In this document: in pieces, positions 11,503 through 64,000 of the stretch
How the letters are laid out: every line of letters starts with the position of its first letter
Position numbering within the stretch: the first letter of the stretch is position 1
NCBI GenBank assembly: GCA_002269645.1
Contig: NIVC01001857.1
Location: 111,664-175,663 of the forward strand
Direction: 5' to 3'
Length of the DNA stretch: 64,000 bases
Origin: Macrostomum lignano
Lineage: Eukaryota
Program-made: the position numbers and the translations under genes
Notes under the pieces: model-generated
What the model saw: only the letters and a program-made list of their open reading frames with translations
Database searches by the model: none
Told to the model about the DNA's origin: nothing

Positions 11503-13600
11503 ATGTCCATCAGTTCCCTGTTCGCCCTACTGCTATGCGCCTCGCTTCTGCCATCGCCAAGCGTCCAGCTGACCAACTGCGGCTACTGCATCTGCGATTG
11601 GCCCAGCATTACCTGCGACTTCCACAAGGTGAAAGACCAACTCCACGGCAGCAAGAACCTGGCCGAATTTGCGCCAAACAGTGGAATCCTCAGGGAATTG
11701 GATGTCGACCCGCTGGATTACCGAGAGCTGTACATTAATTGTAGGAATTCTCCAAAAATTAACAATCAGCGATTAACTCGCAGCCTTCTTAAAGGCTACT
11801 CGAATCTGACTCGGGTGGGGTTGGTCAACTGCGGCCTCATCGGCATCGAGCCGGACGCACTGGCCGACCTCCCGCAGATTCGCGAACTCGACCTTAGCAA
11901 CAACAGGCTGGAACGCCTGCCTGCGGCGCTGTTTCGCAACCGGGAAATGGCGGTGCTCACGCTTAGCGAGAATCCTCGACTAACGTTGACTGCAGAGACA
12001 TTTCTCAATTTCTCATTGGAACGTCTGGTGTTGTCGAAGTGCGGCCTGCAGGAGTTTCCCTGGGACAGCTTGCAGGTTATTCGAAACCTGCACGAGCTGA
12101 CGCTGTCGCAGAATTCTATCCAGGTGGTGCCGAGCGAAGCTATTCAGCTGGTGCGGCGTCTCCGGGTGTTCTACTTGGACGAGAATCCTTTGTCGTGCTT
12201 CTGCACTAATAAATGGATCAGCGAGAGCATCGATTGGAACAGAGTATCGCCACAAATCATTAAGGCAAGTCTATATTTTTCAGCAAGAGGCTCACACTGT
12301 AACAGTGCCTGATTGGCTGCTATTTTTAGCATCAAGTGCCCTATACACTGTACAATGGGCTATTGGCTGCTATTTTTAGCATCAAATAGCTCACGAACTG
12401 TACAGTAATTGATTGGCTAAAATTTATTGCCTTTTTTAGGCACTAACACCTGTTTTTACAGTCCAAATTAATTGGCGGTATAATTGGCGCTTATAACAAT
12501 AACAAATAACTGAGAAAAAAATAATTCAAACCCAATTTTTCTAAAACTTACAGTCGAGCAAGCTACCAAAGTGCGGCAGCCCTCCAACTCTACACGATGT
12601 CGAGCTAACTCGCCTATCGCCCAGCGACTTTCCCTGTCAGGCGCCGGAGATTCGCTCAGTCGACATCCGCCTGGAGCCGGACTCTGCTCAGCTGATCTGC
12701 TCAGCGTCCACTCACCAGTCTGGGCCGCTGGTTTGGACCTACCGTCACCTGGCAATCTACCCAGAGCTGCCCAACGCTTATCCAAGTCGCACCTATCAGA
12801 GCAGCGGCGCCACCTTCCGTCAGTCTGTTCATCGAACGCCGGGCTACGAGCGCGAGAAGTACACCCTGACAGCGCGTAGCGAAGACGGCCAGTTGACCAA
12901 TTTCTCTCTGACGCTGCACTGGCCGCCGGCTGTCGAGTCCGAGGGCGCCGCCTCGGAATCAAAGACTGGGTCAGGAGGCACCGATGATTCGGATTCCTCG
13001 TCGACATCGACCAGGCCGAAACTGCCGACGGAGCCGCAGAAACCGATAAGCGGTGACGGTGGCGTCGGCGGCGATTATTTTTCCCGAAAGCAGTTCACCC
13101 TGATCGAGATGATAATCGCAGTGGTTGGCACCTTCATGGCTACCAGCTTGGTCTTCCTGCTGGCTTGCCAGGCGATCCAGTGGTACAACAAGCGCGACAA
13201 AAAGCGCTGGGCCGCTGGCTACGCCGGGCCGCCCTATTCATACAGCTACAACTCGCACAGGCCGCCGTCGCACGAGTACGACGTGCCCCGAATCGACCAG
13301 CCCTGTCTGCTGCCGAAACAGCCGCCGCCGCCGACTCAGCCACCGCCTCCGCCGCCTCAGCACACGCTGCCAATGCCGCCGCATAATATGCCGACAGGCG
13401 CCGGCGTGTCGCTGTCTTCAACATCTTCGGGTTCGGGCGCGAGCGCCGCAGTGCAGACTTTGCTGTCCAAACACCAACAGCATCACAAGCAACAGCAGCA
13501 GCAACACCTGCCAATAACAACGTCTTCATCATCGAATGGAATGGGCGAGACCGAGTTCCTGGACTATACCGGTCACCGGATTGTCTTCAACCACACCTAA
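11503..13600 (+). CDS. Leucine-rich repeat and Ig-like domain single-pass membrane protein (LIG-type, no kinase), ~602 aa; join(11503..12264,12554..13600)
   Basis: Signal peptide MSISSLFALLLCASLL, Cys N-cap (CGYCICDWPSITC) and LRRs (LRELDLSNNRLERLP, LHELTLSQNSIQVVP). The LRRCT is completed across the splice: NPLSCFCTNKW..IIK|SSKLPKCGSPPTLHDVELTRLSPSDFPC. Then an Ig-like segment (AQLICSAS..LVW..YTLTARS), Ser/Thr stalk, TM (IIAVVGTFMATSLVFLLAC) and Pro/Gln-rich tail. Exon 2 is open and in frame with the 12893-13600 ORF. Confidence 0.9.
12265..12553 (+). other. Probable GC-AG intron (289 bp), donor AAG|GCAAGT, acceptor CTTACAG|
   Basis: Phase-0 join restores the LRRCT. A weaker in-phase GT donor (AGA|GTATCG, 12244) is the alternative. 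Confidence 0.65.
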
Positions 13601-48249: not shown

Positions 48250-48618
48250 CTATGGCTCCGCCCGCTTCTTTCCAATCGATGGCTGAGCGGCGGCAGAAGC
48301 GCGGCCCCGTTTGGACTTGGGACTGCCGGCACTGAACACGGAACTGGCGGCCATCAGGTTCTCAATGTACTGGCCAAGGACTCTGTTCTCGTTTCTTAGT
48401 TTGAGATTCTCTTCTTTGACGCTGTCAACTCGGGAGCCCAGGTCTTCTAAAGTGTTCTGCAGTTCGAGTATCTGCGATACTAACCGGGCTTTCTCCTCTT
48501 CGTCCGCTTCATCGCAGCAGCCGCCGCCGCTTCCCAGCTCCGACCATCGGATGGTCGAAGCTTCATCTTCCTCAGTGTCTGTTGCTGCTGCGGCTGCCGC
48601 TGCTTCAGAGTCGGACAT
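48250..48618 (-). CDS. SCOC: Short coiled-coil protein (SCOC / UNC-69 family), 122 aa, single coding exon
   Basis: [56 protein letters not shown] is the characteristic SCOC/UNC-69 coiled coil. ATG at 48618; the track's longer start is a non-ATG codon. Confidence 0.95.
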
Positions 48619-48769
48619 AATGTACTCTTTTCTTCTTCTTTTAATAAACGATTTTTTCAGCAAATGAGATTCTAATAGCATGCAATACAGATGGTAATTT
48701 AGTCAATTAGAAATTTTATGGAATTCGGTTAAATATTATAAGGATTCCGCAAGTGTCCTGCGACAAAAT

Positions 48770-49365
48770 GTCCTGTGATCTTCAGGGCGCTACAATAACC
48801 TGTCCTGTGACCGCCAGGTGCTACAATAACCTGTACTATGACCTTCAGGTTGCTACAACAACCTGTCCTGTAACCTTCAGGTAGCTACTACAGCCTGTCC
48901 TGTGATCTTCAGGGTGCTAAAACAACCTGTCCTACGACCTTCAGGTTGCTACAACAACCTGTCCTGTGACCTTCAAGGTGCTACAATAACCTGTACTATG
49001 ACCTTCAGGTTGCTACAACAACCTGTCCTGTAACCTTCAGGTAGCTACTACAGCCTGTCCTGTGATCTTCAGGGTGCTACAACAACCTGTCCTACGACCT
49101 TCAGGTTGCTACAACAACCTGTCATGTGACCTCCAGGGTGCTACAACAACCTGTCCTGTGACCTTCAGGGTGCTACAACAACCTGTCCTATGAACTTCAG
49201 GGTGCTACAACAACCTGTTCTCTGACCTTCAGGGTGCTACAACAACCTGTCCTATGAACTTCAGGGTGCTACAACAACCTGTTCTCTGACCTTCAGGGTG
49301 CTACAACACCCTGTCCTATGAACTTCAGGGTGCTACAACAACCTGTCCTCTGACTTTCAGTGTGC
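48770..49365. repeat. 32-bp minisatellite CTACAACAACCTGTCCTGTGACCTTCAGGGTG
   Basis: About 18 copies. Confidence 0.95.
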
Positions 49366-49724: not shown

Positions 49725-50013
49725 GTTGAGCGATTTTCCAGACTGTCTGGGGCGATTTTCTAGACTGTCTCGGGCGATTATCTCGAGACTGTCTGGGGGG
49801 GATTTTCTAAACTGTCTGGGCGATTTTCCAGATCGTCTGGGGCGATTTTCTAGACTGTCTCAGGCGATTTTCCAGATCGTCTGGGGCGATTTTCTAGACT
49901 GCCTCAGGCGATTTTCCAGACTGTCTGGGGCGATTTTCTAGACTGTCTCGGGCGATTTTCTAGACTGTCTCGGGCGATTTTCTAGACTCTCCTGGCCGAT
50001 TTTCTAGACTGTC
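49725..50013. repeat. 22-bp minisatellite CTGGGGCGATTTTCTAGACTGT, last unit overlapping the NME6 stop codon
   Basis: About 13 copies; the unit GATTTTCTAGACTGTC at 49998-50013 includes the CTA (minus-strand TAG) at 50004-50006. Confidence 0.93.
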
Positions 50014-51976
50014 CTGGTTGACGAAGCTGAACAAACATTGATTTGAAATTCATCTGATAATGAAAATTTTGTCCTAAAAAATTTCGCCTCAATAGCGGCC
50101 GTCTCAACCGAGTCCGAGCCGTGGAAACCGTTTCTAGTGTCCGACAGGCCAATGGCGGCTCGCAGACAGTCTGGCCGCTCTATTAGGGCGCGATACACCT
50201 GCGGGAATGAGGGATTAGAGAAGGGATAAGGGAGGGTTCTCTCAGAGTGGGATTAGGGACGGTTCTCTCAGAGTGGGATTAGGGACGGTTCTCTCAGAGT
50301 GGGATTAGGGACGGTTCTCTCAGAGTGGGATTAGGGACGGTTGTCTCAGAGTTAGATTAGGGACGGTTCTCTCAGAGTGGGATTAGGGATGATTCTCTCA
50401 GGGTTGGATTAGGGATGATTCTCTCAGGGTGGGATTAGGGATGATTCTCTCAGGGTTGGATTAGGGATGATTCTCTCAGGGTGGGATTAGGGACGGTTCT
50501 CTCAGAGTGGGATTAGGGACGGTTGTCTCAGAGTTAGATTAGAGACGGTTCTCTCAGAGTGGGATTAGGGACGGTTCTCTCAGAGTGGGATTAGGGATGA
50601 TTCTCTCAGGGTTGGATTCGGGATGATTCTCTCAGGGTGGGATTAGGGATGATTCTCTCAGGGTGGGATTCGGGATGATTCTCTCAGGGTGGGATTAGGG
50701 ATGATTCTCTCAGGGTTGGATTCGGGATGATTCTCTCAGGGTGGGATTAGGGATGATTCTCTCAGGGTGGGATTAGGGATGATTCTCTCAGAGTGGGATT
50801 AGGGATGATTCTCTCAGGGTGGGATTAGGGATGATTCTCTCAGAGTGGGATTAGGGACGGTTCTCTCAGAGTGGGATTAGGGACGGTTGTCTCAGAGTTA
50901 GATTAGGGACGGTTCTCTCAGAGTGGGATTAGGGATGATTCTCTCAGGGTGGGATTAGGGATGATTCTCTCAGAGTGGGATTAGGGATGATTCTCTCAGA
51001 GTGGGATTAGGGATGATTCTCTCAGAGTGGGATTAGGGACGGTTCTCTCAGAGTGGGATTAGGGACGGTTGTCTCAGAGTTAGATTAGGGACGGTTCTCT
51101 CAGAGTGGGATTAGGGATGATTCTCTCAGGGTGGGATTAGGGATGATTCTCTCAGAGTGGGATTAGGGATGATTCTCTCAGAGTGGGATTAGGGATGATT
51201 CTCTCAGAGTGGGATTAGGGACGGTTCTCTCAGAGTGGGATTAGGGACGGTTCTCTCAGAGTGGGATTAGGGACGGTTGTTTCAGAGTTAGATTAGGGAC
51301 GGTTCTCTCAGAGTGGGATTAGGGATGATTCTCTCAGGGTTGGATTCGGGATGATTCTCTCAGGGTGGGATTAGGGATGATTCTCTCAGGGTGGGATTCG
51401 GGATGATTCTCTCAGAGTGGGATTAGGGAGGGTTCTCTCAGAGTAGGATTAGGGACGGTTCTCTCAGAGTGGGATTAGGGATGATTCTCTCAGGGTGGGA
51501 TTCGGGATGATTCTCTCAGAGTGGGATTAGGGAGGGTTCTCTCAGAGTAGGATTAGGGACGGTTCTCTCAGAGTGGGACTAGGGACCGAGTCTCACAGTG
51601 GAATTGTCCCAACTTTAAATGGGCAAGCGATTTACTCTAAAAACAAGCTTCGAACCTTAGTTGGCCCAATAATGTGTCGCCAGCGTTGCACAGCGAGCTC
51701 GCCAGCAAGTAGATAGACGCCAGTATCGCCACACAGTAAATAATTAGTCAGCCGATTATAGAAGAACTTGTTCCTGTGCTCAGCATAGAATTCCATAGCC
51801 AATTGGCGAGTGAAACGAACTTCAGCCCGACTGACAATGTCTATGCCTTCTGCTGCTAATTTAGACTCAACAAATGCTACAAGAGGCTTGAACCTGTAGA
51901 CATCTGGCTTGAGCAGGGCTAGTGTAACCTGCCAAGCCTGACTCCTGGCAGTTGTGGGCAGGTTTACTGATGGCGG
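50004..51976 (-). CDS. NME6: Nucleoside diphosphate kinase 6 (NME6); complement(join(50004..50198,51656..51976)), no genomic ATG at the 5' end
   Basis: Manual translation: PPSVNLPTTARSQAWQVTLALLKPD..EFYAEHRNKFFYNRLTNYLLCG..WRHIIGPTK|VYRALIERPDCLRAAIGLSDTRNGFHGSDSVETAAIEAKFF. TLALLKPD, FYxEHxxKFFY and GLxDTRNxxHGSDS (catalytic His) fit the NME6 subgroup. Donor AAG|GTTCGA, acceptor CCCGCAG|GTG, phase 0. Exon 1 is absent from the ORF track. Confidence 0.93.
50222..51600. repeat. 26-bp minisatellite GGGATTAGGGACGGTTCTCTCAGAGT (~53 copies) filling the NME6 intron
   Basis: Direct; most units contain TTAGGG. Confidence 0.97.
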
Positions 51977-53284
51977 CTAAAACATTGACAAAACACTAAA
52001 ACATTGACTGGACTGCATTACAAAATAAATTTAGAACATAAAGAGAAGATAAAATGAAATTTTCAAACTGATTTAATTTAAATACCAAACACAAATATTT
52101 CTAGTAAAAAATTATGCCTATCTCACTACCTTACAATTAGCCAGTAGTGCTAATTTATGGTTGAACAAATTTATTCTAGATAAATTGCTATCAAAGCAAT
52201 TATAAATGTGGACTGACTTTCATTACTCAATTCTTAATGTTTCAATTCTCCCTAAAGCAATAACACATCAAATCTATCTGAGCACAATATATTCAAAATT
52301 GCTCAAACACCCTTACCTTTCCTTAAGATGTGTTATATATTGTCCAATCCTTAATTATCTTATTTCATTTATGAGCCACAAGCTCACAACCCTTAAAACT
52401 CTCAACTTTTCAAACTAAACTTCTCCATGCTTTCTAAACTCTTCTTAAATCTTAACACAATATGCTTGATTGCTATATCTCCAATCTCTTTACCTGTACT
52501 TACAACACAACTATCCTTAATTATTTCTCTATTTATAAGCCATAGCACTAATATCCAACCTGACTTATCCTAAATCTTTGCCTTACATTAAAGCAATTAT
52601 TTGGTATTTAGATCATTCACTTTTTTATTTTAATTCAAACCATACATTTGGTTGATTTAGTTTGATTCTAAGGTGTCCAAAAAATTAGATTTTTGATTTC
52701 TAGATCTTTAGGGCTTTTAAGAATTCTTATAGGTTAAATCTAGAATATTTCCAGATTAGATTTTTATAGGTTTTAAATAATTGTTTGATTTAAATACAAA
52801 AAGATTATCAATCAATATGACAAAAGCATAGATTTACAAATCTAAATATAATGACTTTAAAACATTTTATAAGAGTTCTATTGGTTTAGCAAAATATAAG
52901 TCTAAGTTATGAGTATAATGTCTAATAAATATACCTATTGTTCTTTCATGAACTTAATCAAAAGTTTTTATTTTACATTGATTTAACTTTACTTTAATGC
53001 TTTCAAGGGTTTTCTAGGTTTTTCTAGGTTGCAAATACCTAGAAATTCTATCTTTATTAGAATATTAAACATAAGATAACAAGAAAAGATCTAAGAAATT
53101 TTTGAAAGAGAAGGCTAAGCTATACCTTACTAATAATTATATTGATCTTTTTTTATAATTTAAGACTAGGCTAGGCCCTAATATTAATTTAAAATTAAAG
53201 GTAGGCCTAACTAGCCTAGAAAAGTTTATGGCAATTTGTGAATATAAAATATACTATAAAAATATTATATTCTGCCTCATACAT

Positions 53285-53330
53285 GCGCAACCTTGGGAAT
53301 CACTCGGCCGGGTGAATCCCTAGGTTGCGC
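53285..53330. other. 46-bp near-perfect GC-rich palindrome
   Basis: GCGCAACCTTGGGAATCACTCGG|CCGGGTGAATCCCTAGGTTGCGC; 23-bp arms with 3 mismatches and no loop. Confidence 0.85.
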
Positions 53331-53896
53331 CTAAGCATGTTCTGCCTTTGGAGTTGATTGCTAAGCTAGATAAAATATAATCATCAATTCATTTGTGGTA
53401 GATTTAGGGGAAGGCACACAAGGTGTGTGTCTCTCTTTATGTAATTAGAATTTTTTCTTTTATGGAAAATACACAACACATGATTATAATAATATATAAT
53501 ATGCATTAAACATATACTTTTAAGTCATCTGCATCCCTTATTTAAAATTTTCTGGATCTATATATGAGTCATTTAGCCTTAACTAGGCCTAACCTAAGCC
53601 TAGGCCTACTATAAAAAAATATAGTATAAAAATTTCAATTAAATAAATAAGATCAAGATTCTATCATAGTATCAGTTTCATACAAATTTTCTATAGTTAA
53701 AATATTAGTCAACATGCTTATTTTAGCATCAGTGATCAGTTGAATACTATAGGCCCAGGCCTACTGAATAATTTATGTCTACTCACTTATTCTTAAGTAC
53801 AGCCCATGTTAATTATTAGGCTTTAGCTTTGAGGCCACTTAGCTAGGTCAAAATATATAAAATAAATATGAATATCATTATCAATCAACAATCAAT

Positions 53897-54340
53897 GGCG
53901 ATCCTACAATTTTCCACTTTTAATTATTTTTCGGTTTTTTTCTGTATTTCAGCTAAGCCACAATGGCCAGTCATCTATCTGCACCAACAACAGTCATCCC
54001 ACCTGTAGAAATTGAACCTGCCAGTGCCAATGCATTGGCTGCCCTGGATGTCAGTCATCGGGAGCTGGTACTGCTGATACCAGACACGCAATCGGCAATG
54101 CGCTGGCTCAGTCGTTATGGGCTAATCTGAAAGACTGAAACTCTTTGCAGTGCGAGAACTGCAACATTGCTATGAGCCTATGTTGCCACAAAGTTGCTGA
54201 CTGTAGCAATGTCAGGCAAGTGGCGTTGGGCCTACAAGATGTGTCAGCAACATAGGGCCATAAGTTTATCGTCATTTCTTATTCCTGCTGTGCCATAATT
54301 TTTCGAAAAATAATTAAAAGCGGAAAACTGTAGGATCACC
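53897..54340 (+). mobile_element. Internally deleted Merlin/IS1016-like DNA transposon (444 bp)
   Basis: ~37-bp TIRs (GGCGATCCTACAATTTTCCACTTTTAATTATTTTTTCG and its inverse at 54304-54340). 8-bp TSD CAATCAAT/CAATCAAC. Internal decayed frame LIPDTQSAMRWLSRYGLI*..QCENCNIAMSL resembles the N-terminal zinc-finger region of eukaryotic Merlin transposases. GG-starting TIRs and an 8-bp TSD fit Merlin. Confidence 0.7.
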
Positions 54341-55196
54341 CAATCAACATGCCATGTTTTTTAGTTAGGCCTATCAATCAACATGGTCCATGGAGATGGA
54401 GGCCTATAATTTGCAAGGTGAAAGTTAATATTTTTATACCCACATTTTCATTTCCACAAAGGCCCAAAGCCATACATAGGTCGACTTTACTTCTTAAGTT
54501 CTTATTCTAGATTCCTAGGACCTAGACTAGACCTACTAACCTAATAATAGTCACAAATATTAACACTACAACTACAAGTACAACTACAAATACTATCCGT
54601 AAGCCCAATTAAAAAAAGATCAAGGATTGGTAAATCTACTCTGATGGTTTAAAGCTGGCAAAACAGTGATGTCTATTAATTTTTCAGTAGGGAGTTTGTG
54701 ATTTTGTAGAGGGCCGAGGCGCATGTGTAGTTGATGTTGGATGTTGCGTGGAAGGAACTCTCAACGCCTTCTGTGATTTTGGCTAGTTTTATTAAGCCTG
54801 ATAAAAAAGGATAAAGAACTAATTCTAGACCCTATTTATTTATATTCCGTTTACCTAGTGCTCTTATAAAACAATCGACTTTAAATGGCTCTATTAGTTT
54901 TACCGAAATACTTTTTTATTTAAATCTAAAACAAGTTGACCTAAAAACGAAAATTTAAAAATTCTAGAAGATTTATTATAAAATTCTTGACGCCCTTTCA
55001 AATACCTTACTTAATACAAATATCGTGTAGTACTCGTTTTCAGCGACCGTGTAAATTTTAACCTTTTGAATAAATACTAAATAAATCGGATCATACTGGC
55101 ATAACAGGCTCCTTAAGCCTGAGCCAAATTTACTACTACTACTACTACTACTACCGTTTTTATTTTTGGTGCGTCAGGCCTATACAAATGTCTCTT

Positions 55197-55453
55197 GGCC
55201 TTTTCATATTGCTTGTTCTGGTTCCAGAACCAGAACCAATTTGTGAAGTATAACTTTTTGTCTCCATAACTAGAGGGAAATACGTGCTATAAAGTTTTAT
55301 CATTGAATGACAATCGCCAACAAGAAAGTGAAAAATTGTGCTAAGTTAGGTTGTTAGGGCAGTCAAATATTAACAGAGTTTAATAGTTATACTGCTGTTT
55401 TTCTTGGAATTCCGAACCGATTCTGGTTCTGGAATAGGTAATATGAAAAGGCC
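55197..55453. mobile_element. MITE-like element with terminal inverted repeats GGCCTTTTCATATT..TTCCAGAACCAGAA
   Basis: Inverted pair at 55197-55240 and 55415-55453; no TSD identified. Confidence 0.55.
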
Positions 55454-56433
55454 CACTATGTGCTATAGTTTTCTAATCTAAAGGGTACTGTTTATATTCA
55501 AACTGGGAGGTATGATACCATAAATAATATGTACCAGTCAATTTGACATGTACGATGTACCCCCTAATTGTGCTTGTGCATATGCCCTACTATTCTCTGT
55601 GCAATGTGCATGACATACAACTCTCTTGCTCTCTTTTGTCTAATAAACATAGCTAATATCATAGAATTTTTTAAATTTACATTGTATCACTGTCACTGAT
55701 TCACTGAAAAGCAATTTGTGCAAACATAATATATACATGTTTTTATGATTATAGTGGGGCCTATAGGGCTATAGGCCTATCTATAGTGTTAGACATAGGC
55801 ACCAGTCTATTTAGCATTCAGCCCTAATCTATTAATAATTGTTGATAAGCATTTAGATTTTTCATTAACATTAATGAACTGCTGTTCAGATTTTTTGTGC
55901 TAGGCCCTAATAAATTAGTGGCCTAATAAATTTGTTAATATTTTTTGTGAGTTAAATAACAAATTTAGCATTGACAAGTCATTAATGTTAATGACAATAT
56001 CAATAGCCAAGATGCAAATAAAGAACAAAAGTATAAGTTTGATGACAAAAAGTTGCAACATTACTAATGTTTTTTTATTTTATTTAAGTGCCTAATTAAT
56101 CTTTTTAATTTGTTTATAACAAATAAGCATAAAAATATAACAACTTTGTCTTTGTATAAAAACTTTAAGGAATTAAAATTGTGAACTTTATTGCTTGCAC
56201 ATATAAGCATCCCATTATTTTGATTCAATTTTTTCTAAATCTTTTTAAATTGTAACTTTCTATTATACATAGGCCTATTAACTAATGCAACTAAAATAAC
56301 ATTGTTTGTCAATTATTGTTAACTAATTATATGTGCAACTCCCCTGATTTACATTAGCTATGCAACTTATTTTTTGACTAAAAATGCAACTTACCTATAA
56401 ATTTATATGTTCTAATTTTATCAATTAAATTCA

Positions 56434-56445
56434 TATCTTAATTTC

Positions 56446-56495
<50 letters not shown>

Positions 56496-56645
56496 CCAAT
56501 AATTGTAAATTATTATAAGTGGTTATTTATATATAGGTATTCATTGTAGCTTATTTATAGGTATATAAGGTATGTATAAATAACCACTTATATAATAATT
56601 TACAATGTATAGGCCTATATATATATATGCCTTGAAATTAAGATA
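56434..56645. repeat. AT-rich foldback (inverted repeat) containing (TA)n
   Basis: The arm TATCTTAATTTCAAGG(TA)nGGCC..ATTGTAAATTATTA..AAGTGGTTATTTAT is mirrored on the opposite strand with a ~35-bp spacer. Confidence 0.8.
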
Positions 56646-57076
56646 CAAGTTACATATAACTATTGCATATATTTTCTGATTATAAGCCTAGCAGTATGCA
56701 GTTCTACAAAAATACTATGAAATAATTTTAACAAATCCAAATATTTTAAATAATTATACAAATAGGCCTAACTAATGATATCATTGGATAGGGCCTAGTA
56801 ATATACTTCTAAATCTAAGTAAAAAAGGTAAGCAAAACTTTTAAAAAATTATCTGTAAGGTTTTTTTAATTAATATTTGCACTTATAATTGCAAAACATT
56901 TTATTAATGAAAAAGATCTTTTTTATACTTTTCTTTTTATTGTACTCCTTTCTTATCTTTTCTGTTTGTTAACAGCAAGGGGAGCATTTAAATCTTCTAT
57001 AATAAAAAGAATATTGCAGGTCAGTTAAGAGCTGCAGATCTATCTCAGGGTTCTATAGAGATTGACAATGGTATTA

Positions 57077-57410
57077 CAAGGGTCATCCCAAAAGTTTCAG
57101 CAAATGCCTATTAATTTTCAACAAACAAATGTCAGAACAATGAACATGTCAAAAACCTTCAAAATAACTTCCGTTGACTTGAATTGTGCGCTCCCAGTGG
57201 CCAGGCAACTTCTGAACACCGTCAGCAGCACCAGATTCACATAGGTCTTTTGCAATGCAGCCAACCTTGCTAAATAGGTCATCCAGGCAATGGAAATGAT
57301 GCCCTTGGAGCTGGTTCTTGAGCTTTGGAAAAAGGTTGAAATCGTAGGGACTGAGGTCTGGGGAGTAAGGAGGATGAGGCAGCACTTCCTGAGGCAGAAA
57401 TGATTCTTGG
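57077..57410 (-). mobile_element. Mariner transposon 3' fragment (transposase C-terminus and TIR)
   Basis: EVLPHPPYSPDLSPYDFNLFPKLK..GVQKLPGHWERTIQVNGSYFE carries the YSPDL motif. TA followed by CAAGGGTCATCCCAAAAGT at 57075 resembles a mariner TIR end. Confidence 0.85.
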
Positions 57411-58049
57411 ATTATTCTAAGATTGATTAAACTCATAATTTATTAATAGGATAATCCTGGTGGCAGTTACCAACATTTATAAAACAGGAGTTTAGCCCTT
57501 TGACAATTTTAGTGACAGCTGTGGAATCATTTGAAGAAACAGAAGAAACACCCCTTTGACAACTTTGGTGGCAGCATAAGGACTAAGCAGAGGCTCAGAA
57601 TTAGGACTTTATAAGACAGAGATAAGAGGCCTAGCACAGCTTGGTGGCATTAGGGGAATAGCTAAAAAGGGAAGCAACACCCCTGTTACAGCTTGGTGTC
57701 TCAGCGGTGGGATTCTCAATGTACAGGAAACACCACTAGCACAAAGGTTTTAGCAAAATTATCAATATACTCTAAAAGCTATTAGTCATTGCTTAACATA
57801 ATAGCCCTTGTTGATGTAAGTCTATAGCCTTTTTTAAGCTACTAAGACTATTGATAGCAGTCTACTAGGATATCTTACATGTATACTTTAAGCTAAAATA
57901 TAGTAAATATGTCAAATAATGAAATACTTTTTAATACAACTGCTATAACTTCATGCTTATTGATAAAAATATTCAGTTGAAGGGAAAGTTCTTGCCAATT
58001 TGAAAAACTTAAATTGTATTAAGTTTTTATAGAACTGAAGCAACTTCAC

Positions 58050-58950
58050 AAAGTGAAGTTATTTTAAGTTGCTCATTACTATCATATTTGATGACTTTCT
58101 GCCATCATTTGTGCAGACTCATGATGCCATCCTTATAGAACTTAGAGCTTGTTTTGAGGCAAAGAAGTTGTCCAGCCAAAGTTCATGCTCATCATTGAAC
58201 AATTTCTTTGCCATGGTGCTAGATAGGAATAGGAAGTTACAAGTATGAACAAGTGGTAATCCAATGGTGCAAGGTCCAGTTAATAAGGTAGATAAGGTAA
58301 AACCTCCTAGCCTAGATCAAGTAGCTTTTGCCAAGTAACCTTCACCATATGCGGCCATACATTGTTGTAAAAAGACAGACAGATCATGATTTAGGCATTT
58401 TTCTTTGATCTTTGCTACCAAATCATCTAGTTGCTAATAGTACTTGTTAGCTATAATTGTCAGGTTTAATGGCAATAGCTCATAGTGAATGTTGCCATTG
58501 CAGTCCCACCAGATACTGAGCATCACTTTCCTGACTTTTGAGTGGTGCTTTCAGTTGGCTGTGGTTTTGGCAATTTTTTTATCTACCCACAAAGCACAGC
58601 ATTTCACATTGATATATAAATACCACTTTTTGTCACTTATCATTATGGATGTTAGCCAATGGGTTGTGCAATAGTAGGATAGAAAAAAACATTGCAGCAT
58701 CAGTACAATGCCAATGCTCCAACTTGGTAAGGTTGTGGGATACCTATTATGCCACCTTGTACACCTTACCTAGCTGGCGTAGATGATCAATGATGGTCTG
58801 GTGTACCCCGAGGACATCTGCTATTTCATGCAAGGTTTGGTGGGGATTGGCTTCTATGAGCTAGTGCAGCTGCTCATCATCTACCCCCAATGGTTGACCT
58901 GATTGGGGCTGGTCTTTGAGTTTAAAGTTTCTATTACAGAAATGAAAGAA
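58050..58950 (-). mobile_element. Heavily decayed near-full-length mariner transposase pseudogene
   Basis: Manual translation: KDQPQSGQP..LIEANPHQTLHEIADVLGV..HLRQLGKV..*VSHNLT..SDKKW..; YNNVWPHMVKVTWQKLLDLG*EVLPYLPY*LDLAPLDYHLF; FYKDGIMSL.*WQKVI. These correspond to the mariner HTH, WVPH, GDEKW, HDNARPH and YSPDLAPSD motifs, with stops. Confidence 0.88.
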
Positions 58951-61107
58951 ATAGTCCTAGGCAGTTCTGTTAGACATGGTCCCCTCTCTAAATGCAGAGT
59001 TAATGTGACATACCACTGCTGGACATGCGTGGTACCTGCAGTTTAGGTTTACTGGTTTTGTCTACTTTAGAACTTAGTGGATTTTTGGGGTATATTGGTA
59101 GATTTCGCTGCCACCAGGTTCCTGCTGTTCCCTAATTCTAGCTTTAAGTTAAAGAACTGAGTCAGGACACCAATTCAGATTTGGTTAACACAAAAGTCTT
59201 AATAATAATAAACAGAAATGGTTATTTGTTTGTTGGTCTAAAGACCAACAAAAGTTGGTCTTTACATTAGTTCCTATCTTAAGTTTCCCCATTTTGTGCA
59301 TTAGGCAACACTCCCAGTTAGAGGCAAGACTCCTCTTGTGCAGGCCTAAGTATTCCCCTTTATATTTTCCCTTCTTACTGATTCTTAGCTGAGTTTCTAA
59401 GACAGGTTGCCACGGGATGCTTTCCCAAGAGCCCAACTGCTCTGTAGTTCTAAAGGATCCTGAAAACTAGCGATTTACCCCTGCTCTAATTATTTCCCCA
59501 GGTTGAAACTACTGATAGTAGGCAAAAAGCATGTTCGAACCTGCAATAATTCCCATTCCTAAAATTATGCCCTACTATACTGCCAACATATTAAGACCAG
59601 ATTTAAAGGTCATAGAGCAAATATCCACAGATATAGAGTTTTGAAATTTCCATTTTCTAGTGCTATTCTGAAGAAAATAGAAGGCAATGACTATGAAATG
59701 ATGCCCACCCATCCTGCTTTATAGCAATGGAAGGTTCTAGAACTTCAGAATTTGCCTTGTACTATATATTTTTTTAAATGGGCAAGAACTTTCCCTTCAA
59801 CCAAATATAAGATATTTAGGTAAACTATTAGTCAAACAAGATTTAAACAGGTAAAGTTTAGCCCTATTCATCAACCTACTGAAGAGAAAACTCAGTTATC
59901 TAGGAAACCTTCCTAGACCACTTTGCATATATATACCCTATCTTTTGTATTTCATGGTTTTTATGATTAGGGCTACTAGGTATATCTAGTCAGGTGGTAT
60001 AAATTTTGGTAAGATTTTTTCAAAACAAACTGATTATTGTCTTAATTTTTTTTTTAATTAGTGGTATAAGCTTGTGTAGACTGCAAAGCTGATAAAAATG
60101 GGCATTCAAAATGTGCTAGATATGAGCTTTAAAATATTTTGTCCCACCAAAGTTTTCCTACCTGGTACTATGTATAATTTGTGTAGTGTCCTGATTTTTA
60201 AAAGTTTGATAGGTCTACGTATCATTTGGAATTGCATCTTATCCTATCATAATTTCAGGTTAATTTCTATAAAAGAGATGATACCATTGGGTGTATATGC
60301 CGAATCTTCAAAGACACCTGGTCCTGATTAACAAATTCAACATTCTATCAGTGCTAATGTACATAGAAAAGTAAGTAAAAAATTCATTTTTTGTCTCATT
60401 TGTCATAAAAATATTTGTTTCTGTTTTCTACTTTCTACTTTTTCTACTGACAGTAGTGTTCGTGGTCTTATTAGTAAGCCATTCATTTCAAACATTTTAA
60501 AATGTTTTTTTGTATTTTCTGCTAACTAGGAAGCAGCATTTAGAATTTTATTTGAAGTGGCAAGTAATAACTTTAATACAAGTAATAATGTTATATTAAA
60601 TTTCATTTTTGAATTGTGCAAATTCACATTGTCAATCAAACTAATTTGTGTTGTTACAAATCCTTGTGTGTGCAGACAAAAAACATTATTTTACAAGTTT
60701 AAAAGTGCTTCTTTCAATGGGTTAGGTACACACTTTATTTGGATTCATCGACAAAAAAATTGATCTAAGTTGACAAAAATTAAGTATTTTTTGTACAAGC
60801 AACTTGTCTAAAACGGTTTGTAGAGCATGAATGAAGGTATAATTTATAGATGAAAAATTATATTTAAATAAGCAAAATTCAGGATTTCAAAATTCAATCA
60901 TCTTATCTGTTCTAAACTCATTCATGCTCATTAGACATAAATTTCAGGGTACAAGGTACTCGTAACAATATAAAATATTGTCAGATTCGTTAATATTTTC
61001 CTTGATTAGCTAAGCTCATTGGTAGTTTCTCAAAAATAGCTATAGAGATAATGAAAAAGTTATAAATTTCACTTGCATAGAAACCTAATAGATTGAAATT
61101 ATTTCTG

Positions 61108-64000
61108 TTAGATTGTGTAGATGTTGTGAAAGCGCACTGGCTGCTCCATGATTATAGGGAAGATGACTATTGACATTATACAGACGAGCAGCGCTATTTT
61201 TTGGTTGCTAATTGTCCTCATGGCTGAGTTAAAGTCGCACGGTATTGTAACATTGCGCAGTGCCGGGCAGTACTTCTCTGCGCCGCCGTCTGAACTCTCG
61301 TGGGCGCAGGTTCCATTAATGATGCGATAAGCGCCAGATGCAACCAGTTTTCGCATTAGTTTACAATTGAAGTCGAATGCATTTAGCTTGCGCTCACGCC
61401 AGTTCTCAATGACCAATAGAAACAGGTTTGTGTCCTTTAGCGAGGTCACGTAATAGAAGCCTTGCATGCAGGGTCCAGAGACGTTGCCAACTAGCATGCG
61501 ACTTTTGCCTAGTGCTGTCTCGTTTACCTCAAACGAGATTACATCCTGGATGCAGCCATACGAATTAGAGAAACCCGGTATTGGGCCCCTGGTTTTGTAT
61601 AGATCGTCGCTCTCCTCAGGTGTAGTCGGTATGCCGTTCATTGTAACCTTTGGCGCGCTGCCGGTGAAACTGCAAGTGCCCTGAAAATCTACGGACTCGT
61701 CGCGTTGGATTAGACTCTGTCGAATACAAGATTCATCATCACTTCGCCCTCTTTCTGGCCCAAAGTTACGCCTTTATACTTGCCTTCGTCCAGATCGGTT
61801 GCGGAGATAAAGTCCGGTGCCATTATAACGTTGACGCGATTGTCAAACAGATAGCAAAGCGTACTGCACTTGTTCTTAGTGCCGTCTGGACACGTGTATT
61901 TGGCGTTGCACGATTTAACTCCGTCCGAAGCTTGCATTAGATTATAGACTTTCCGATGGAAGTTATTGTAGTTGAGATCTAAGCTTGTAATAGCCTCGAT
62001 GCGCTCTGTTGCGCACCGCTTGCCGTGTTCGATATCCCTGCTTGGTCCCTTGGCCGCGCTAATGTAGCAGTAACCGCTAATGCACTCGATGCCTTCCTCA
62101 CATGGGCAGCCGCCTGGCTTGGCCTTTGTCGTGTTTGAAACTTCACAATCGGATAGGTTTTTATTCTCCATGCCTTCAAATACGGCCTGAGAAATTGTGA
62201 TAATTTTACCGCTGCCTGCCGAGTCGAAGTACGGCGTAGATATCGAAGTCTTCGTTGGCGAACTCTTTGTTCGACTGTACCAGGGCCGAGTAGTGGGATC
62301 GTACAACCTTACTGACCGATGTCCGGGATACGTTCTGAACACGCCGCTGCGCATGCCGACGTAGGTCCAGATAACCTCGTCTATCCAGCTGAACTGCCTG
62401 TCGCGCCATCTCTCTTCGATTGGTTGCGTTACTAGAATATAGGCGCGCACGCCTTTCTCGTATCTGCTACCATTTTCGCAGCTATCGTCGCTCGTGTTAC
62501 CCGTCATGTACTTGTGCGCCTCGAGAGTTTTACCAGCAAGATCGTCGTCGAAAAAGTATTCCAATGGTTCGCAGTAGCACTTTGGGGCTAGGAATATGCT
62601 TGAGTGTAGCTCAGTTACTCGCAGTTTCAAGTATTTCGACATGTTAAATTTGACGTTTAAATATTTGAAAACGTTTGGATAGACGCTGAGCACTTTGCTG
62701 CTATTGTATTCAATTAGCAGATTAAAGTAGCTAGTATTGCGAGGCTTTAGATATGTAAAGTCAACCTTCGGCTCGATCAATCTTCTGTACACTTTATCGG
62801 TCCTGGATAGAACAAAGGCCACTGAGTAGTCTGTATCGTTCACTTTGCTGTAGTAGTACTCTAATGGCATTGTTTCGTACTTAACTCCGGCCCTGTGGTC
62901 GCCTTTCGGAATGCCGCGTCTACCATTCTTTATTTCAACCATACCAGTTTTTCCGCTTATCATATTGCGAAACACAGTGTTAAACTCTTTTGGTACGCCT
63001 TTTTTGCTTTGCTCCATCCTTTGAATGTGAATGAATATTGGGTCGTCCTTCAGGGTTGCACTGCCTTTCAGTAGTGGATGGTAGATAGTTTGTCCTTCTT
63101 TATCGATCAGGAAGGATGTCACTGAGCCCCATTGCTTTCTTGTAACATAAGTTTCGATCTCTTCTAGCGTGGCATCGACTCCAACCACACCGATGGTTTT
63201 TTGCCTGCTCCCTTCAATTTTGCTAATTACTGGTACAGCGTGTGTAACCATAGTTCCTAGGCCAAAGGCGTCAATATAAGGTGAGGTCCACAGTCCTTCC
63301 GTGTTTGGAGAAATTCGAGCTAGAAAGTCAAAATAGTTATCCATACGCGAGATTAAATTTTCGCCGTTCTCTAATTTGCGTAAACTGCCACTGTGATTGC
63401 AGGCAAGTGCACCCGGGAACATTTGACCGTCGTCCTTAATGAGGTAGCTGAATATTCTTGCTTGCGGTCTTGTATTAAGATTAGTCGAGTTGACGATAGA
63501 CCAGACCCGTGTCCAATTGTACTTGCATACTGGACCGGGCACGTAGCCAGATCTTGTGTAATAGCCTGGTCCGCAACGCACTGTCTCGCCATCGGTATCT
63601 TTACCATCCGTAATAAAGATTAGAATAGATAAGCATCCAGTTCTAGCTGTAGAATTTAGAAGATCGAATGCCATTTGAAATCCGTGCTCCAATTCGCTAG
63701 TTCCGCCCGGTATGAGTCCATCAATTTTCTCCATCAGATCTTTTCTAAACTCGATTGTCGCTGGTACCATTTTGTTCACTTGACAGCTAAGCACTTCAGA
63801 TTTGAAGGAGTGCCACTTGCCGACTTCGTCCCAGTGGCTCGCTCGTGCACAAACAACATTTAAATAATCCTGCTTTGTAAGTGTCTTAATTACTGCCTTG
63901 GCAACTGATCTGGCGATGCCGAACTTTTCTCCAGCCATGCTGGCACTGCAGTCTATCACAATGACAACATCTTTTGGCGCCACTTGTAGCAGCAATGTAC
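61108..64000 (-). CDS. Alpha2delta / CACHD1-like VWA and Cache domain protein, 5'-partial, with a frameshift at ~61713-61722 (possible pseudogene or assembly error)
   Basis: VWA: PKDVVIVIDCSASM..GGTSE..IFITDG. Cache motifs: WTSPYIDAFGLGTMVTHAVP, VVGVDATL, FLIDKEGQTIYHP, GVFRTYPG..YDPTTRPWY, STPYFDSAGSGKIITISQAV. ORF1 stops at 61710; an overlapping frame (LIQRDESVDFQGTC..) continues to a hydrophobic C-terminus and stop at 61108. Confidence 0.88.

What the first reader, a model, noticed from the sequence alone, without database searches (positions are those of the whole stretch)
51656..51990. NME6 has no start codon; its acceptor is exactly in frame for a spliced-leader AUG
Seen: the NME6 frame begins right after TTTTAG| at 51976 (CCG CCA TCA..), and there is no in-frame ATG before the conserved TLALLKPD. 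The only nearby in-frame ATG reads ATG-TTT-TAG, so it is closed by the acceptor's own TAG. Known: flatworm spliced leaders end in AUG, which can serve as the initiator Met. Inference: trans-splicing SL-AUG onto 51976 gives MPPSVNLPTTARSQAWQVTLALLKPD (172 aa), an N-terminus of normal NME6 length, so the protein could depend on the SL for its start codon. The acceptor motif GTCAATGTTTTAG is present twice in tandem.
Basis: partly seen in the sequence, partly recalled or inferred. Interest (0 to 1): 0.8.

Follow-up and report, generated by a model that had tools for sequence, protein, structure and literature searches.

The report
Flatworm NME6 borrows its start codon
A Macrostomum lignano NME6 kinase gene has no start codon of its own and almost certainly gets its AUG from the spliced leader RNA joined to its first exon, which is a real but already well-known flatworm mechanism.

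Summary
On the minus strand, a two-exon NME6-type nucleoside diphosphate kinase gene (51976..51656 and 50198..50004) opens directly after TTTTAG. The codon before it is that TAG. The first genomic in-frame ATG is codon 61, inside the kinase domain. The 13-nt acceptor motif occurs twice, 19 nt apart.

The organism is Macrostomum lignano. Its 35-nt spliced leader (SL) ends in ATG. NCBI holds two paralogous gene models, both labelled "partial". One starts exactly at the homologous AG|CCG, and there the acceptor TTACAG matches the published trans-splice motif. That annotation set gene 5' ends from SL-containing RNA-seq reads. Across the three copies there are 5 synonymous changes to 1 non-synonymous (P=0.004), so the gene is under purifying selection and needs a start codon.

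I could not reach SL-junction reads or translation data for this gene, so the support is indirect. Use of the flatworm SL AUG as initiator has been known since Cheng et al. 2006 and is acknowledged for Macrostomum. This is therefore a new example of a known kind, of low interest.

In passing: the SL's last 9 nt sit in the genome just upstream of the next gene (DUF2205). This is most simply a footprint of polishing the assembly with RNA-seq reads.

The parts
51977..51989 (-). Proximal copy of GTCAATGTTTTAG. Its AG (51978-51977) is the proposed SL trans-splice acceptor, and its TAG (51979-51977) is the in-frame stop that closes the frame upstream; contains ATG-TTT-TAG (51985-51977).
51996..52008 (-). 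Distal copy of the same 13-mer, 19 nt upstream. An SL-AUG joined here (first exon base 51995) would be out of frame and give a 43-codon ORF, MCFVNV...
51656..51976 (-). NME6 exon 1: 107 codons, PPSVNLPTTARSQAWQVTLALLKPD...IIGPTK, with no initiator ATG; donor AAG|GTTCGA.
51959..51961 (-). In-frame CTG (codon 6, A at -3): a candidate near-cognate start under the rival explanation.
   Evidence: read from the sequence
51794..51796 (-). First genome-encoded in-frame ATG (codon 61, LAMEFY). A start here would remove the first ~45 residues of the NDK domain, including the LLKPD strand.
50199..51655 (-). Single intron (1457 nt), almost entirely a 26-bp satellite (50223-51586, ~52 copies). The paralogues have 935- and 728-nt introns.
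50004..50198 (-). NME6 exon 2: VYRALIERPDCLRAAIGLSDTRNGFHGSDS...STRTV plus stop (50006-50004); acceptor TTCCCGCAG|.
48253..48618 (-). Next gene on the same strand (DUF2205 / short coiled-coil protein), with its own ATG at 48618. The gap to NME6 is largely satellite, so this is probably the next cistron of the same SL-processed cluster.
48679..48687 (-). TATTGCATG, identical to the last 9 nt of the SL, at the position where paralogue L001 has the acceptor TATTTCCAG|CTATTAG.

Best explanation
The gene is a functional M. lignano NME6-type nucleoside diphosphate kinase. Its pre-mRNA carries an outron that ends in the acceptor TTTTAG (51977). The 35-nt spliced leader, which ends ...UUGCAUG, is trans-spliced onto 51976. 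The SL's terminal AUG is then the first AUG of the mature mRNA (32-nt 5' UTR) and lies in frame 0 with CCG CCA TCA..., giving MPPSVNLPTTARSQAWQV followed by the NDK fold (172 aa). Shown here: the gene anatomy, the lack of any usable genomic AUG, the frame, purifying selection, and the coincidence of the RNA-seq/SL-read-guided paralogue model with the homologous AG. Taken from the literature: the SL sequence, the frequency of SL trans-splicing in this species, and the competence of flatworm SL AUGs as initiators. Inferred: that this particular acceptor receives the SL and that ribosomes start at that AUG.
For: (1) The frame opens directly after AG and is closed upstream by the acceptor's own TAG; the first genomic in-frame ATG is codon 61, inside the NDK domain.
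(2) The organism is M. lignano (100% identical PAA81703.1). [quoted passage not shown]
(3) NCBI models of both paralogues are 5'-partial. Mlig013839.g2 starts exactly at AG|CCG. TBONE set such 5' ends from SL-read peaks, and '.g2' indicates a gene cut out of a longer transcriptional unit (PMC5730564).
(4) In L002 the acceptor is TTACAG, the only AG between -120 and +75 that matches the published trans-acceptor motif [T/C]TNCAG.
(5) The window and L002 differ at 7 of the 12 bases before the junction, yet both place AG at the same in-frame position, while the 75 nt after it are identical in all three copies.
(6) There are 5 synonymous to 1 non-synonymous changes among the three copies, P=0.0044 under neutrality, and the HGSD catalytic motif is intact.
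(7) In the SL-spliced mRNA the next AUG after the SL AUG is out of frame (CCAGATGTC; 8 codons before the stop).
(8) SL-AUG initiation has been shown in Schistosoma and inferred in Echinococcus. [quoted passage not shown]
(9) The next gene carries an SL footprint at its acceptor, so this gene cluster is SL-processed.
Against: No SL-junction read, cDNA or peptide for this gene could be retrieved. The exact MPPSV... protein is not in the 15-billion-protein collection, and no held supplement lists the gene. The window acceptor TTTTAG has T instead of C at -3 of the published motif. Paralogue L001 has TG instead of AG at the junction, and its model starts 2 nt after the next AG (CAG|TAAACC), where an SL-AUG would read AUG-UAA; at least one copy may therefore be spliced unproductively, or the site may be less fixed than assumed. 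Other in-frame AGs (+39, +48) and an in-frame CTG exist. 'Partial' in this annotation only means the ORF is open to the transcript's 5' end; the L001 DUF2205 model is also partial although it has its own ATG.
Confidence: 0.75

Rival explanations
1. The SL is trans-spliced, but to a different in-frame AG inside the annotated N-terminus: 51937 (CAG|GCT, giving MAWQVTLALLKPD) or 51928 (CAG|GTT, giving MVTLALLKPD). The protein is still SL-AUG dependent but shorter.
For: Both AGs are in frame and conserved in all three copies, including L001, which lacks the AG at the main site. The resulting N-termini (4 or 1 residues before VTLALLKP, counting the Met) resemble the short orthologue N-termini, median 8 and minimum 3.
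Against: Both have poor pyrimidine tracts (8/17 and 7/17) and do not match [T/C]TNCAG. The L002 model starts at AG|CCG, not at these sites.
Confidence: 0.07
2. Translation starts at a non-AUG codon, for example the in-frame CTG at 51961-51959 (codon 6, A at -3), on the trans-spliced or unspliced RNA. The SL AUG is not used.
For: The CTG is in frame in a reasonable context and gives 11 residues before the VTLALLKP strand, a normal length. In L001 another CTG sits directly before CCG.
Against: On an SL-spliced mRNA a cap-proximal AUG precedes the CTG in the same frame, and flatworm SL AUGs are competent initiators (Cheng et al. 2006). No evidence for CTG use could be obtained.
Confidence: 0.08
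3. An undetected upstream exon with an ATG is cis-spliced to 51976.
For: The acceptor could serve cis-splicing as well; sharing of acceptors between cis- and trans-splicing is reported for parasitic flatworms (PMC12582326). The 9.1-kb upstream spacer has 88 ATG...|GT phase-0 combinations.
Against: None of the 88 has a GT[GA]AG donor or at least 8/9 consensus match. This filter is weak, because NME6's own donor scores only 6/9. The RNA-seq-guided models of both paralogues have no upstream exon, and no CDS is annotated within 10 kb upstream. The nearest same-strand gene is a separate VWA/Cache protein that ends about 9 kb away.
Confidence: 0.06
4. This copy is an untranslated decaying duplicate (pseudogene) in a polyploid genome, so the missing ATG has no functional meaning.
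For: M. lignano is a hidden polyploid with about 79% duplicated BUSCOs. This copy has no deposited protein model. L001 has lost the AG.
Against: The two-exon ORF is intact in all three copies, with 5 synonymous to 1 non-synonymous changes (P=0.0044), and the coding sequence diverges far less (0.6-1.2%) than the flanks (4-9%). The catalytic HGSD motif is present. None of the three copies has an ATG, so the lack of one is ancestral and not decay.
Confidence: 0.03

Closest known systems
Flatworm mRNAs that use the spliced leader's 3'-terminal AUG as initiator methionine (Cheng, Cohen, Ndegwa & Davis 2006, J Biol Chem 281:733; Schistosoma mansoni and S. japonicum; extended to Echinococcus granulosus in PMC3510090)
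   Same: The SL ends in AUG. The acceptor is in frame with a conserved ORF. There is no genomic AUG that would preserve the conserved N-terminal domain. The SL AUG is the first AUG of the mature mRNA.
   Different: The species is different (a free-living macrostomorph, an early-branching flatworm) and so is the gene (NME6). No NDK-family member is mentioned in the held literature on SL-AUG use. SL addition and initiation are inferred here, whereas Cheng et al. showed them experimentally.
slORFs: ORFs created by SL-donated start codons in nematodes, ascidians and euglenozoa (slORFfinder, PMC9851317)
   Same: The start codon is supplied in trans by the leader.
   Different: Those are mostly near-cognate NUG starts creating new or alternative ORFs. 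Here a canonical AUG completes the main, conserved ORF.
Metazoan NME6 (group II nucleoside diphosphate kinase)
   Same: Pfam NDK domain at 3e-27. The best named hits are NME6 of arthropods and cnidarians at 40-47% identity. The LLKPD and HGSD motifs are present. Size is about 170-190 aa with a short N-terminal extension.
   Different: The orthologues retrieved all begin with a genome-encoded Met. The C-terminal tail is unrelated and ends inside a 22-bp satellite.

Membership tests
SL-AUG-initiated flatworm mRNA (Cheng et al. 2006 class) | The organism's spliced leader ends in AUG | tested here: met
   The organism was identified as M. lignano. The SL is CGGTCTCTTACTGCGAAGACTCAATTTATTGCATG (PMC8629364). 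No SL RNA gene lies in the window, so this rests on the paper.
SL-AUG-initiated flatworm mRNA (Cheng et al. 2006 class) | The mRNA is SL trans-spliced at the acceptor in question | not testable with these tools
   Only indirect evidence: paralogue model Mlig013839.g2 starts exactly at AG|CCG in an annotation that sets 5' ends from SL reads. No reads or cDNAs were reachable.
SL-AUG-initiated flatworm mRNA (Cheng et al. 2006 class) | The SL AUG is in frame with the main ORF, with no intervening stop | tested here: met
   ATG+CCG CCA TCA... is open through both exons to the stop at 50006-50004.
SL-AUG-initiated flatworm mRNA (Cheng et al. 2006 class) | No genome-encoded in-frame AUG would preserve the conserved N-terminus | tested here: met
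   The upstream codon is TAG. The first in-frame ATG is codon 61, while the NDK domain starts at about residue 17. The same holds in both paralogues.
SL-AUG-initiated flatworm mRNA (Cheng et al. 2006 class) | Translation demonstrably initiates at the SL AUG | not testable with these tools
   Needs Ribo-seq, N-terminal proteomics or a reporter.
NME6 / group II nucleoside diphosphate kinase | NDK domain (PF00334) above the gathering threshold | tested here: met
   95.5 bits against a cut-off of 27, residues 17-148.
NME6 / group II nucleoside diphosphate kinase | Closest named relatives are NME6 rather than NME1-4, 5 or 7 | tested here: met
   Named hits are 'nucleoside diphosphate kinase 6' from many arthropods and Actinia, E 1e-33 to 1e-24. 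PDB hits are group II NDK domains. No phylogeny was built.
NME6 / group II nucleoside diphosphate kinase | Catalytic histidine in the N-x-x-H-G-S-D motif | tested here: met
   TRNGFHGSDS aligns with trnacHGSDs of 8g2z.
M. lignano operon (Ustyantsev & Berezikov criterion: adjacent same-strand SL-spliced genes less than 1 kb apart after subtracting repeats) | Repeat-adjusted distance to the neighbouring SL-spliced gene is under 1 kb | tested here: inconclusive
   From the NME6 stop (50004) to the DUF2205 junction (48678) is about 1.3 kb, of which about 870 nt is satellite, leaving about 0.45 kb. The SL status of both genes is inferred and the NME6 poly(A) site is unknown. The upstream VWA/Cache gene is about 9 kb away.

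The most novel reading that the evidence does not exclude
Two readings beyond a routine SL-AUG example are not excluded. (a) The SL-identical 9-mer TATTGCATG upstream of DUF2205 (48687-48679) may be real genomic sequence written by cDNA-templated conversion from a trans-spliced mRNA. That would turn an SL-donated AUG into a genome-encoded one and destroy the acceptor. (b) The NME6 paralogues may really differ in acceptor state: a duplicated acceptor here, TTACAG in L002, and the AG lost in L001 with the next AG giving AUG-UAA. A single acceptor base would then act as a start-codon switch that silences individual copies in a polyploid genome.
Probability: 0.1. Interest if true: 0.6.

Novelty: new member of a known kind. 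Interest (0 to 1): 0.2.

Why it matters
For biology the finding is modest. It adds a conserved mitochondrial-type kinase gene from an early-branching, free-living flatworm to the list of mRNAs that depend on the spliced leader for their start codon. This is consistent with the mechanism extending beyond the parasitic flatworms (Neodermata), where it was shown.

For annotation it has practical value. It explains why both deposited M. lignano NME6 proteins are labelled "partial"; they should be completed with an SL-encoded Met.

M. lignano has working transgenesis, so the acceptor variants among the three copies (in frame, out of frame, AG lost) provide a ready-made design for testing SL-AUG dependence in vivo.

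The side observation is a caution for any SL-trans-splicing organism: polishing an assembly with RNA-seq can overwrite acceptor sites with the SL's 3' end and create spurious genomic ATGs.

Tried and rejected
(1) I looked for SL-bearing transcripts. The exact MPPSV... 172-aa protein is not in the collection, and the >90% identity cluster holds only the two NCBI genomic models.

(2) Logan-derived 'orthologues' P0012, P0019 and P0028 turned out to sit on compact, intron-less genomic contigs from unrelated organisms, with no SL at their 5' ends. I dropped this line.

(3) No flatworm NME6 orthologue other than M. lignano appeared among the 50 significant hits, so conservation of SL-AUG use across flatworms could not be tested.

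(4) Searches for the gene by name or ID in the main texts and held supplements of the M. lignano papers found nothing. Cheng et al. 2006 is not held.

(5) No SL RNA gene is in the window.

(6) The upstream ATG-exon scan found no consensus donor, but the filter is weak.

(7) I considered whether L001's AG->TG was an SL polishing footprint. TG<->AG differences between copies occur at about 15 distinct sites (22 pairwise hits), and an SL read cannot align past -1 at that site, so this is not supported. It remains either a real difference or an unexplained error.

(8) The exact DUF2205 protein of the window is not on record, so I could not establish which assembly or scaffold the window comes from.
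Full report
**What is there.** The feature lies on the minus strand. Reading that strand, a two-exon gene runs from 51976 to 50004.
- Exon 1 is 51976..51656: 107 codons, with donor AAG|GTTCGA.
- The intron is 1457 nt and consists almost entirely of a 26-bp satellite (TRF 50223-51586, about 52 copies).
- Exon 2 is 50198..50007, followed by TAG at 50006-50004, behind the acceptor TTCCCGCAG|.
- The 171-codon product has a Pfam NDK domain (PF00334, 95.5 bits, residues 17-148).
- Its best named relatives are NME6 proteins of arthropods and a sea anemone, at 40-47% identity.
- The catalytic HGSD motif aligns with solved group II NDK domains.

**The observation.**
- The frame opens at 51976 directly after TTTTAG.
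- The in-frame codon upstream is the acceptor's own TAG (51979-51977), preceded by TTT and ATG.
- The first genome-encoded in-frame ATG is codon 61 (51796-51794). A start there would delete the first ~45 residues of the NDK domain, including the LLKPD strand.
- GTCAATGTTTTAG occurs exactly twice in the window, at 51989-51977 and 52008-51996. No shuffle out of 100 reached two matches.
- The spacing is 19 nt. An SL-AUG joined at the distal copy would therefore be out of frame, giving a 43-codon ORF.

**Organism and paralogues.** The protein is 100% identical to PAA81703.1 (Mlig010698g1) of Macrostomum lignano. A second model, PAA74336.1 (Mlig013839g2), differs by N69D. NCBI labels both "partial". 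I fetched their loci: L001 (NIVC01000516.1) and L002 (NIVC01000955.1). The window is a third copy, 91-96% identical to them over many kilobases, which fits the known hidden polyploidy of this species (PMC10468722).

The alignment of the 5' regions (A1) is the most informative internal evidence:
- All three copies share ...GTCAATGTTTTAG, then diverge over 15-19 nt, and are identical again from CCGCCATCAG onwards for at least 75 nt.
- L002 reads TGCGCATAATTACAG|CCG. The window reads TGTTTTGTCAATGTTTTAG|CCG. The two differ at 7 of the 12 bases before the junction, yet both place an AG at exactly the same in-frame position.
- L002's TTACAG is the only AG between -120 and +75 that matches the published M. 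lignano trans-splice acceptor motif [T/C]TNCAG. The deposited L002 model begins at the first base after that AG.
- L001 reads TTACTG CCG, with no AG. Its model starts 2 nt after the next AG (CAG|TAAACC), where an SL-AUG would read AUG-UAA.

**Is the gene functional?** Among the three copies there are six distinct codon changes, five of them synonymous. With 126.7 synonymous and 386.3 non-synonymous sites, at least 5 of 6 being synonymous has P=0.0044 under neutrality. Coding divergence (0.6-1.2%) is far lower than that of the flanks (4-9%). None of the copies has an ATG, so the lack of one is ancestral and is not a sign of decay. A translated gene with no start codon of its own needs one from elsewhere.

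**What the literature supplies.**
- The M. lignano SL is CGGTCTCTTACTGCGAAGACTCAATTTATTGCATG. [quoted passage not shown]
- The Mlig_3_7 annotation used the TBONE pipeline. It maps SL-containing reads after trimming and cuts transcriptional units into genes at those peaks; ORFs were then called with TransDecoder (PMC5730564).
- A '.g2' model that starts at an AG with a 5'-open ORF is what that pipeline produces at an SL site.
- "Partial" alone is not proof of SL-AUG dependence. The L001 model of the downstream DUF2205 gene is also 5'-open although it has its own ATG 19 codons in.
- Cheng et al. 2006 established that the flatworm SL's terminal AUG can act as initiator Met. [quoted passage not shown]
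- E. granulosus shows the same, with conservation of SL-AUG use within the Neodermata (PMC3510090).

**Mechanism proposed.** The outron is removed and the SL is joined at 51976. The SL AUG is the only AUG in the leader and the first in the mRNA. It reads straight into PPSVNLPTTARSQAWQV and then the NDK fold. If it were skipped, the next AUG (CCAGATGTC) is out of frame and stops after 8 codons. The resulting 17 residues before the first beta-strand motif fall within the orthologue range: 39 orthologues, median 8, mostly 3-16. That length argument does not separate this model from a CTG-6 start (11 residues) or from SL addition at the in-frame AGs at +39 or +48.

**What could not be done.** No SL-junction read, cDNA, Ribo-seq or peptide evidence for this gene is reachable with the tools.
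- The exact MPPSV... protein is not in the protein collection.
- The Logan 'orthologues' I followed are from unrelated compact genomes.
- No other flatworm NME6 appeared among the hits.
- The gene is not named in any held text or supplement.
- The scan for an upstream ATG exon found no consensus donor among 88 phase-compatible candidates in the 9.1-kb spacer. NME6's own donor is weak, so this is only mildly informative.

**Context.**
- Upstream on the same strand, about 9 kb away, is a VWA + Cache-domain gene. It resembles a calcium-channel alpha2delta subunit; that resemblance is my own reading, while the domains come.
- Downstream is a DUF2205 gene (48618..48253). Satellites make up about 870 nt of the ~1.3-kb gap. 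After subtracting repeats, the pair would meet the published <1 kb operon criterion, but the SL status of both genes is inferred.

**An unplanned finding.** At the 5' end of DUF2205, L001 has the acceptor CTGTATTTCCAG|CTATTAG. The window has CTGTATTGCATG|CTATTAG and L002 has CTGTATTTCATG|CTATTTG.
- The window differs from L001 by three substitutions within 5 nt, in about 180 nt that are otherwise identical.
- All three substitutions go toward the SL base, producing the SL's last 9 nt (10/12 identity to the SL 3' end). This is the strongest such site among all TG/AG differences between the copies.
- The Mlig_3_7 methods state that the assembly was polished with Pilon using Illumina DNA and RNA-seq reads mapped by STAR.
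- A simple +1/-1 extension shows that an SL-bearing read would align into that upstream sequence as far as -9, with mismatches exactly at -2, -3 and -5. Those are the three altered positions. Positions -10 and -12, which lie beyond the extension, are unaltered.
- At both NME6 acceptors the SL cannot extend past -1, so no overwriting is expected there, and the AG is intact in the window and in L002.
- The simplest reading is a polishing footprint. That in turn implies SL-junction reads exist at CAG|CTATTAG. Real cDNA-templated conversion is not excluded.
- L001's A->T at the NME6 junction is not explained this way, and it is not statistically unusual: such differences occur at about 15 distinct sites (22 pairwise hits).

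**Verdict.** The mechanism is long known, so this is a new member of a known kind. Confidence in the SL-AUG explanation is about 0.75, plus about 0.07 for the variant in which the SL is joined at another in-frame AG. Interest is 0.2.

Noticed in passing
window 48679-48690 (minus strand); L001:12638-12649; L002 ~12590-12600: The SL's last 9 nt (TATTGCATG) sit in the genome where paralogue L001 has the acceptor TATTTCCAG| of the DUF2205 gene. There are 3 substitutions in 5 nt, all toward the SL, and the flanks are identical. The Mlig_3_7 assembly was polished with RNA-seq, and a simulated SL-read extension predicts exactly these three positions. This is probably a polishing footprint that destroys an acceptor and creates a spurious in-frame genomic ATG.
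   Followed up: partly
L001:9974-10003 compared with window 51995-51962: Paralogue L001 has TTACTG instead of an AG acceptor before CCG. Its NCBI model starts 2 nt after the next AG (CAG|TAAACC), where an SL-AUG would give AUG-UAA. This may be a copy silenced by a single acceptor base, or an assembly error.
   Followed up: partly
window 50223-51586, 49730-50013, 48769-49365: Three different satellites (26-, 22- and 32-bp units) fill the NME6 intron, its 3' end and 3' UTR, and the gap to the next gene. The NME6 stop codon (50006-50004) lies inside the first 22-bp unit. Intron length varies among the paralogues (1457, 935 and 728 nt) through satellite copy number.
   Followed up: partly
window 61710-63995 and 61108-61641 (minus strand): A long ORF with VWA and dCache_1 domains (calcium-channel alpha2delta-like) runs off the window end. 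It lies on the same strand, about 9 kb upstream of NME6, and may be the '.g1' of the same transcriptional unit.
   Followed up: partly
window 57149-57436 (minus strand), within the AT-rich spacer 52000-61100: A 95-aa ORF containing ...PPYSPDLSPYDFNLFPKLK..., which looks to me like the C-terminal part of a mariner/Tc1-type transposase. It had no Pfam hit at E<=0.01. The spacer is 28-38% GC and conserved among the paralogues.
   Followed up: no
L001:12650-12712; window 48678-48616: For DUF2205, an SL-AUG at CAG|CTATTAG would be in frame in L001 and the window, adding 21 residues ([21 protein letters not shown]) before the gene's own Met. In L002 a 5-nt deletion puts it out of frame. The SL AUG is therefore probably not the functional start for that gene.
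   Followed up: no
window 60126 region (plus-strand orientation relative to L002 minus strand): A second site where one copy reads ...ATACATG| and another reads ...ATATGAG|, with 3 of 3 differences toward the SL's CATG. It may be an indel shift rather than an SL footprint.
   Followed up: no
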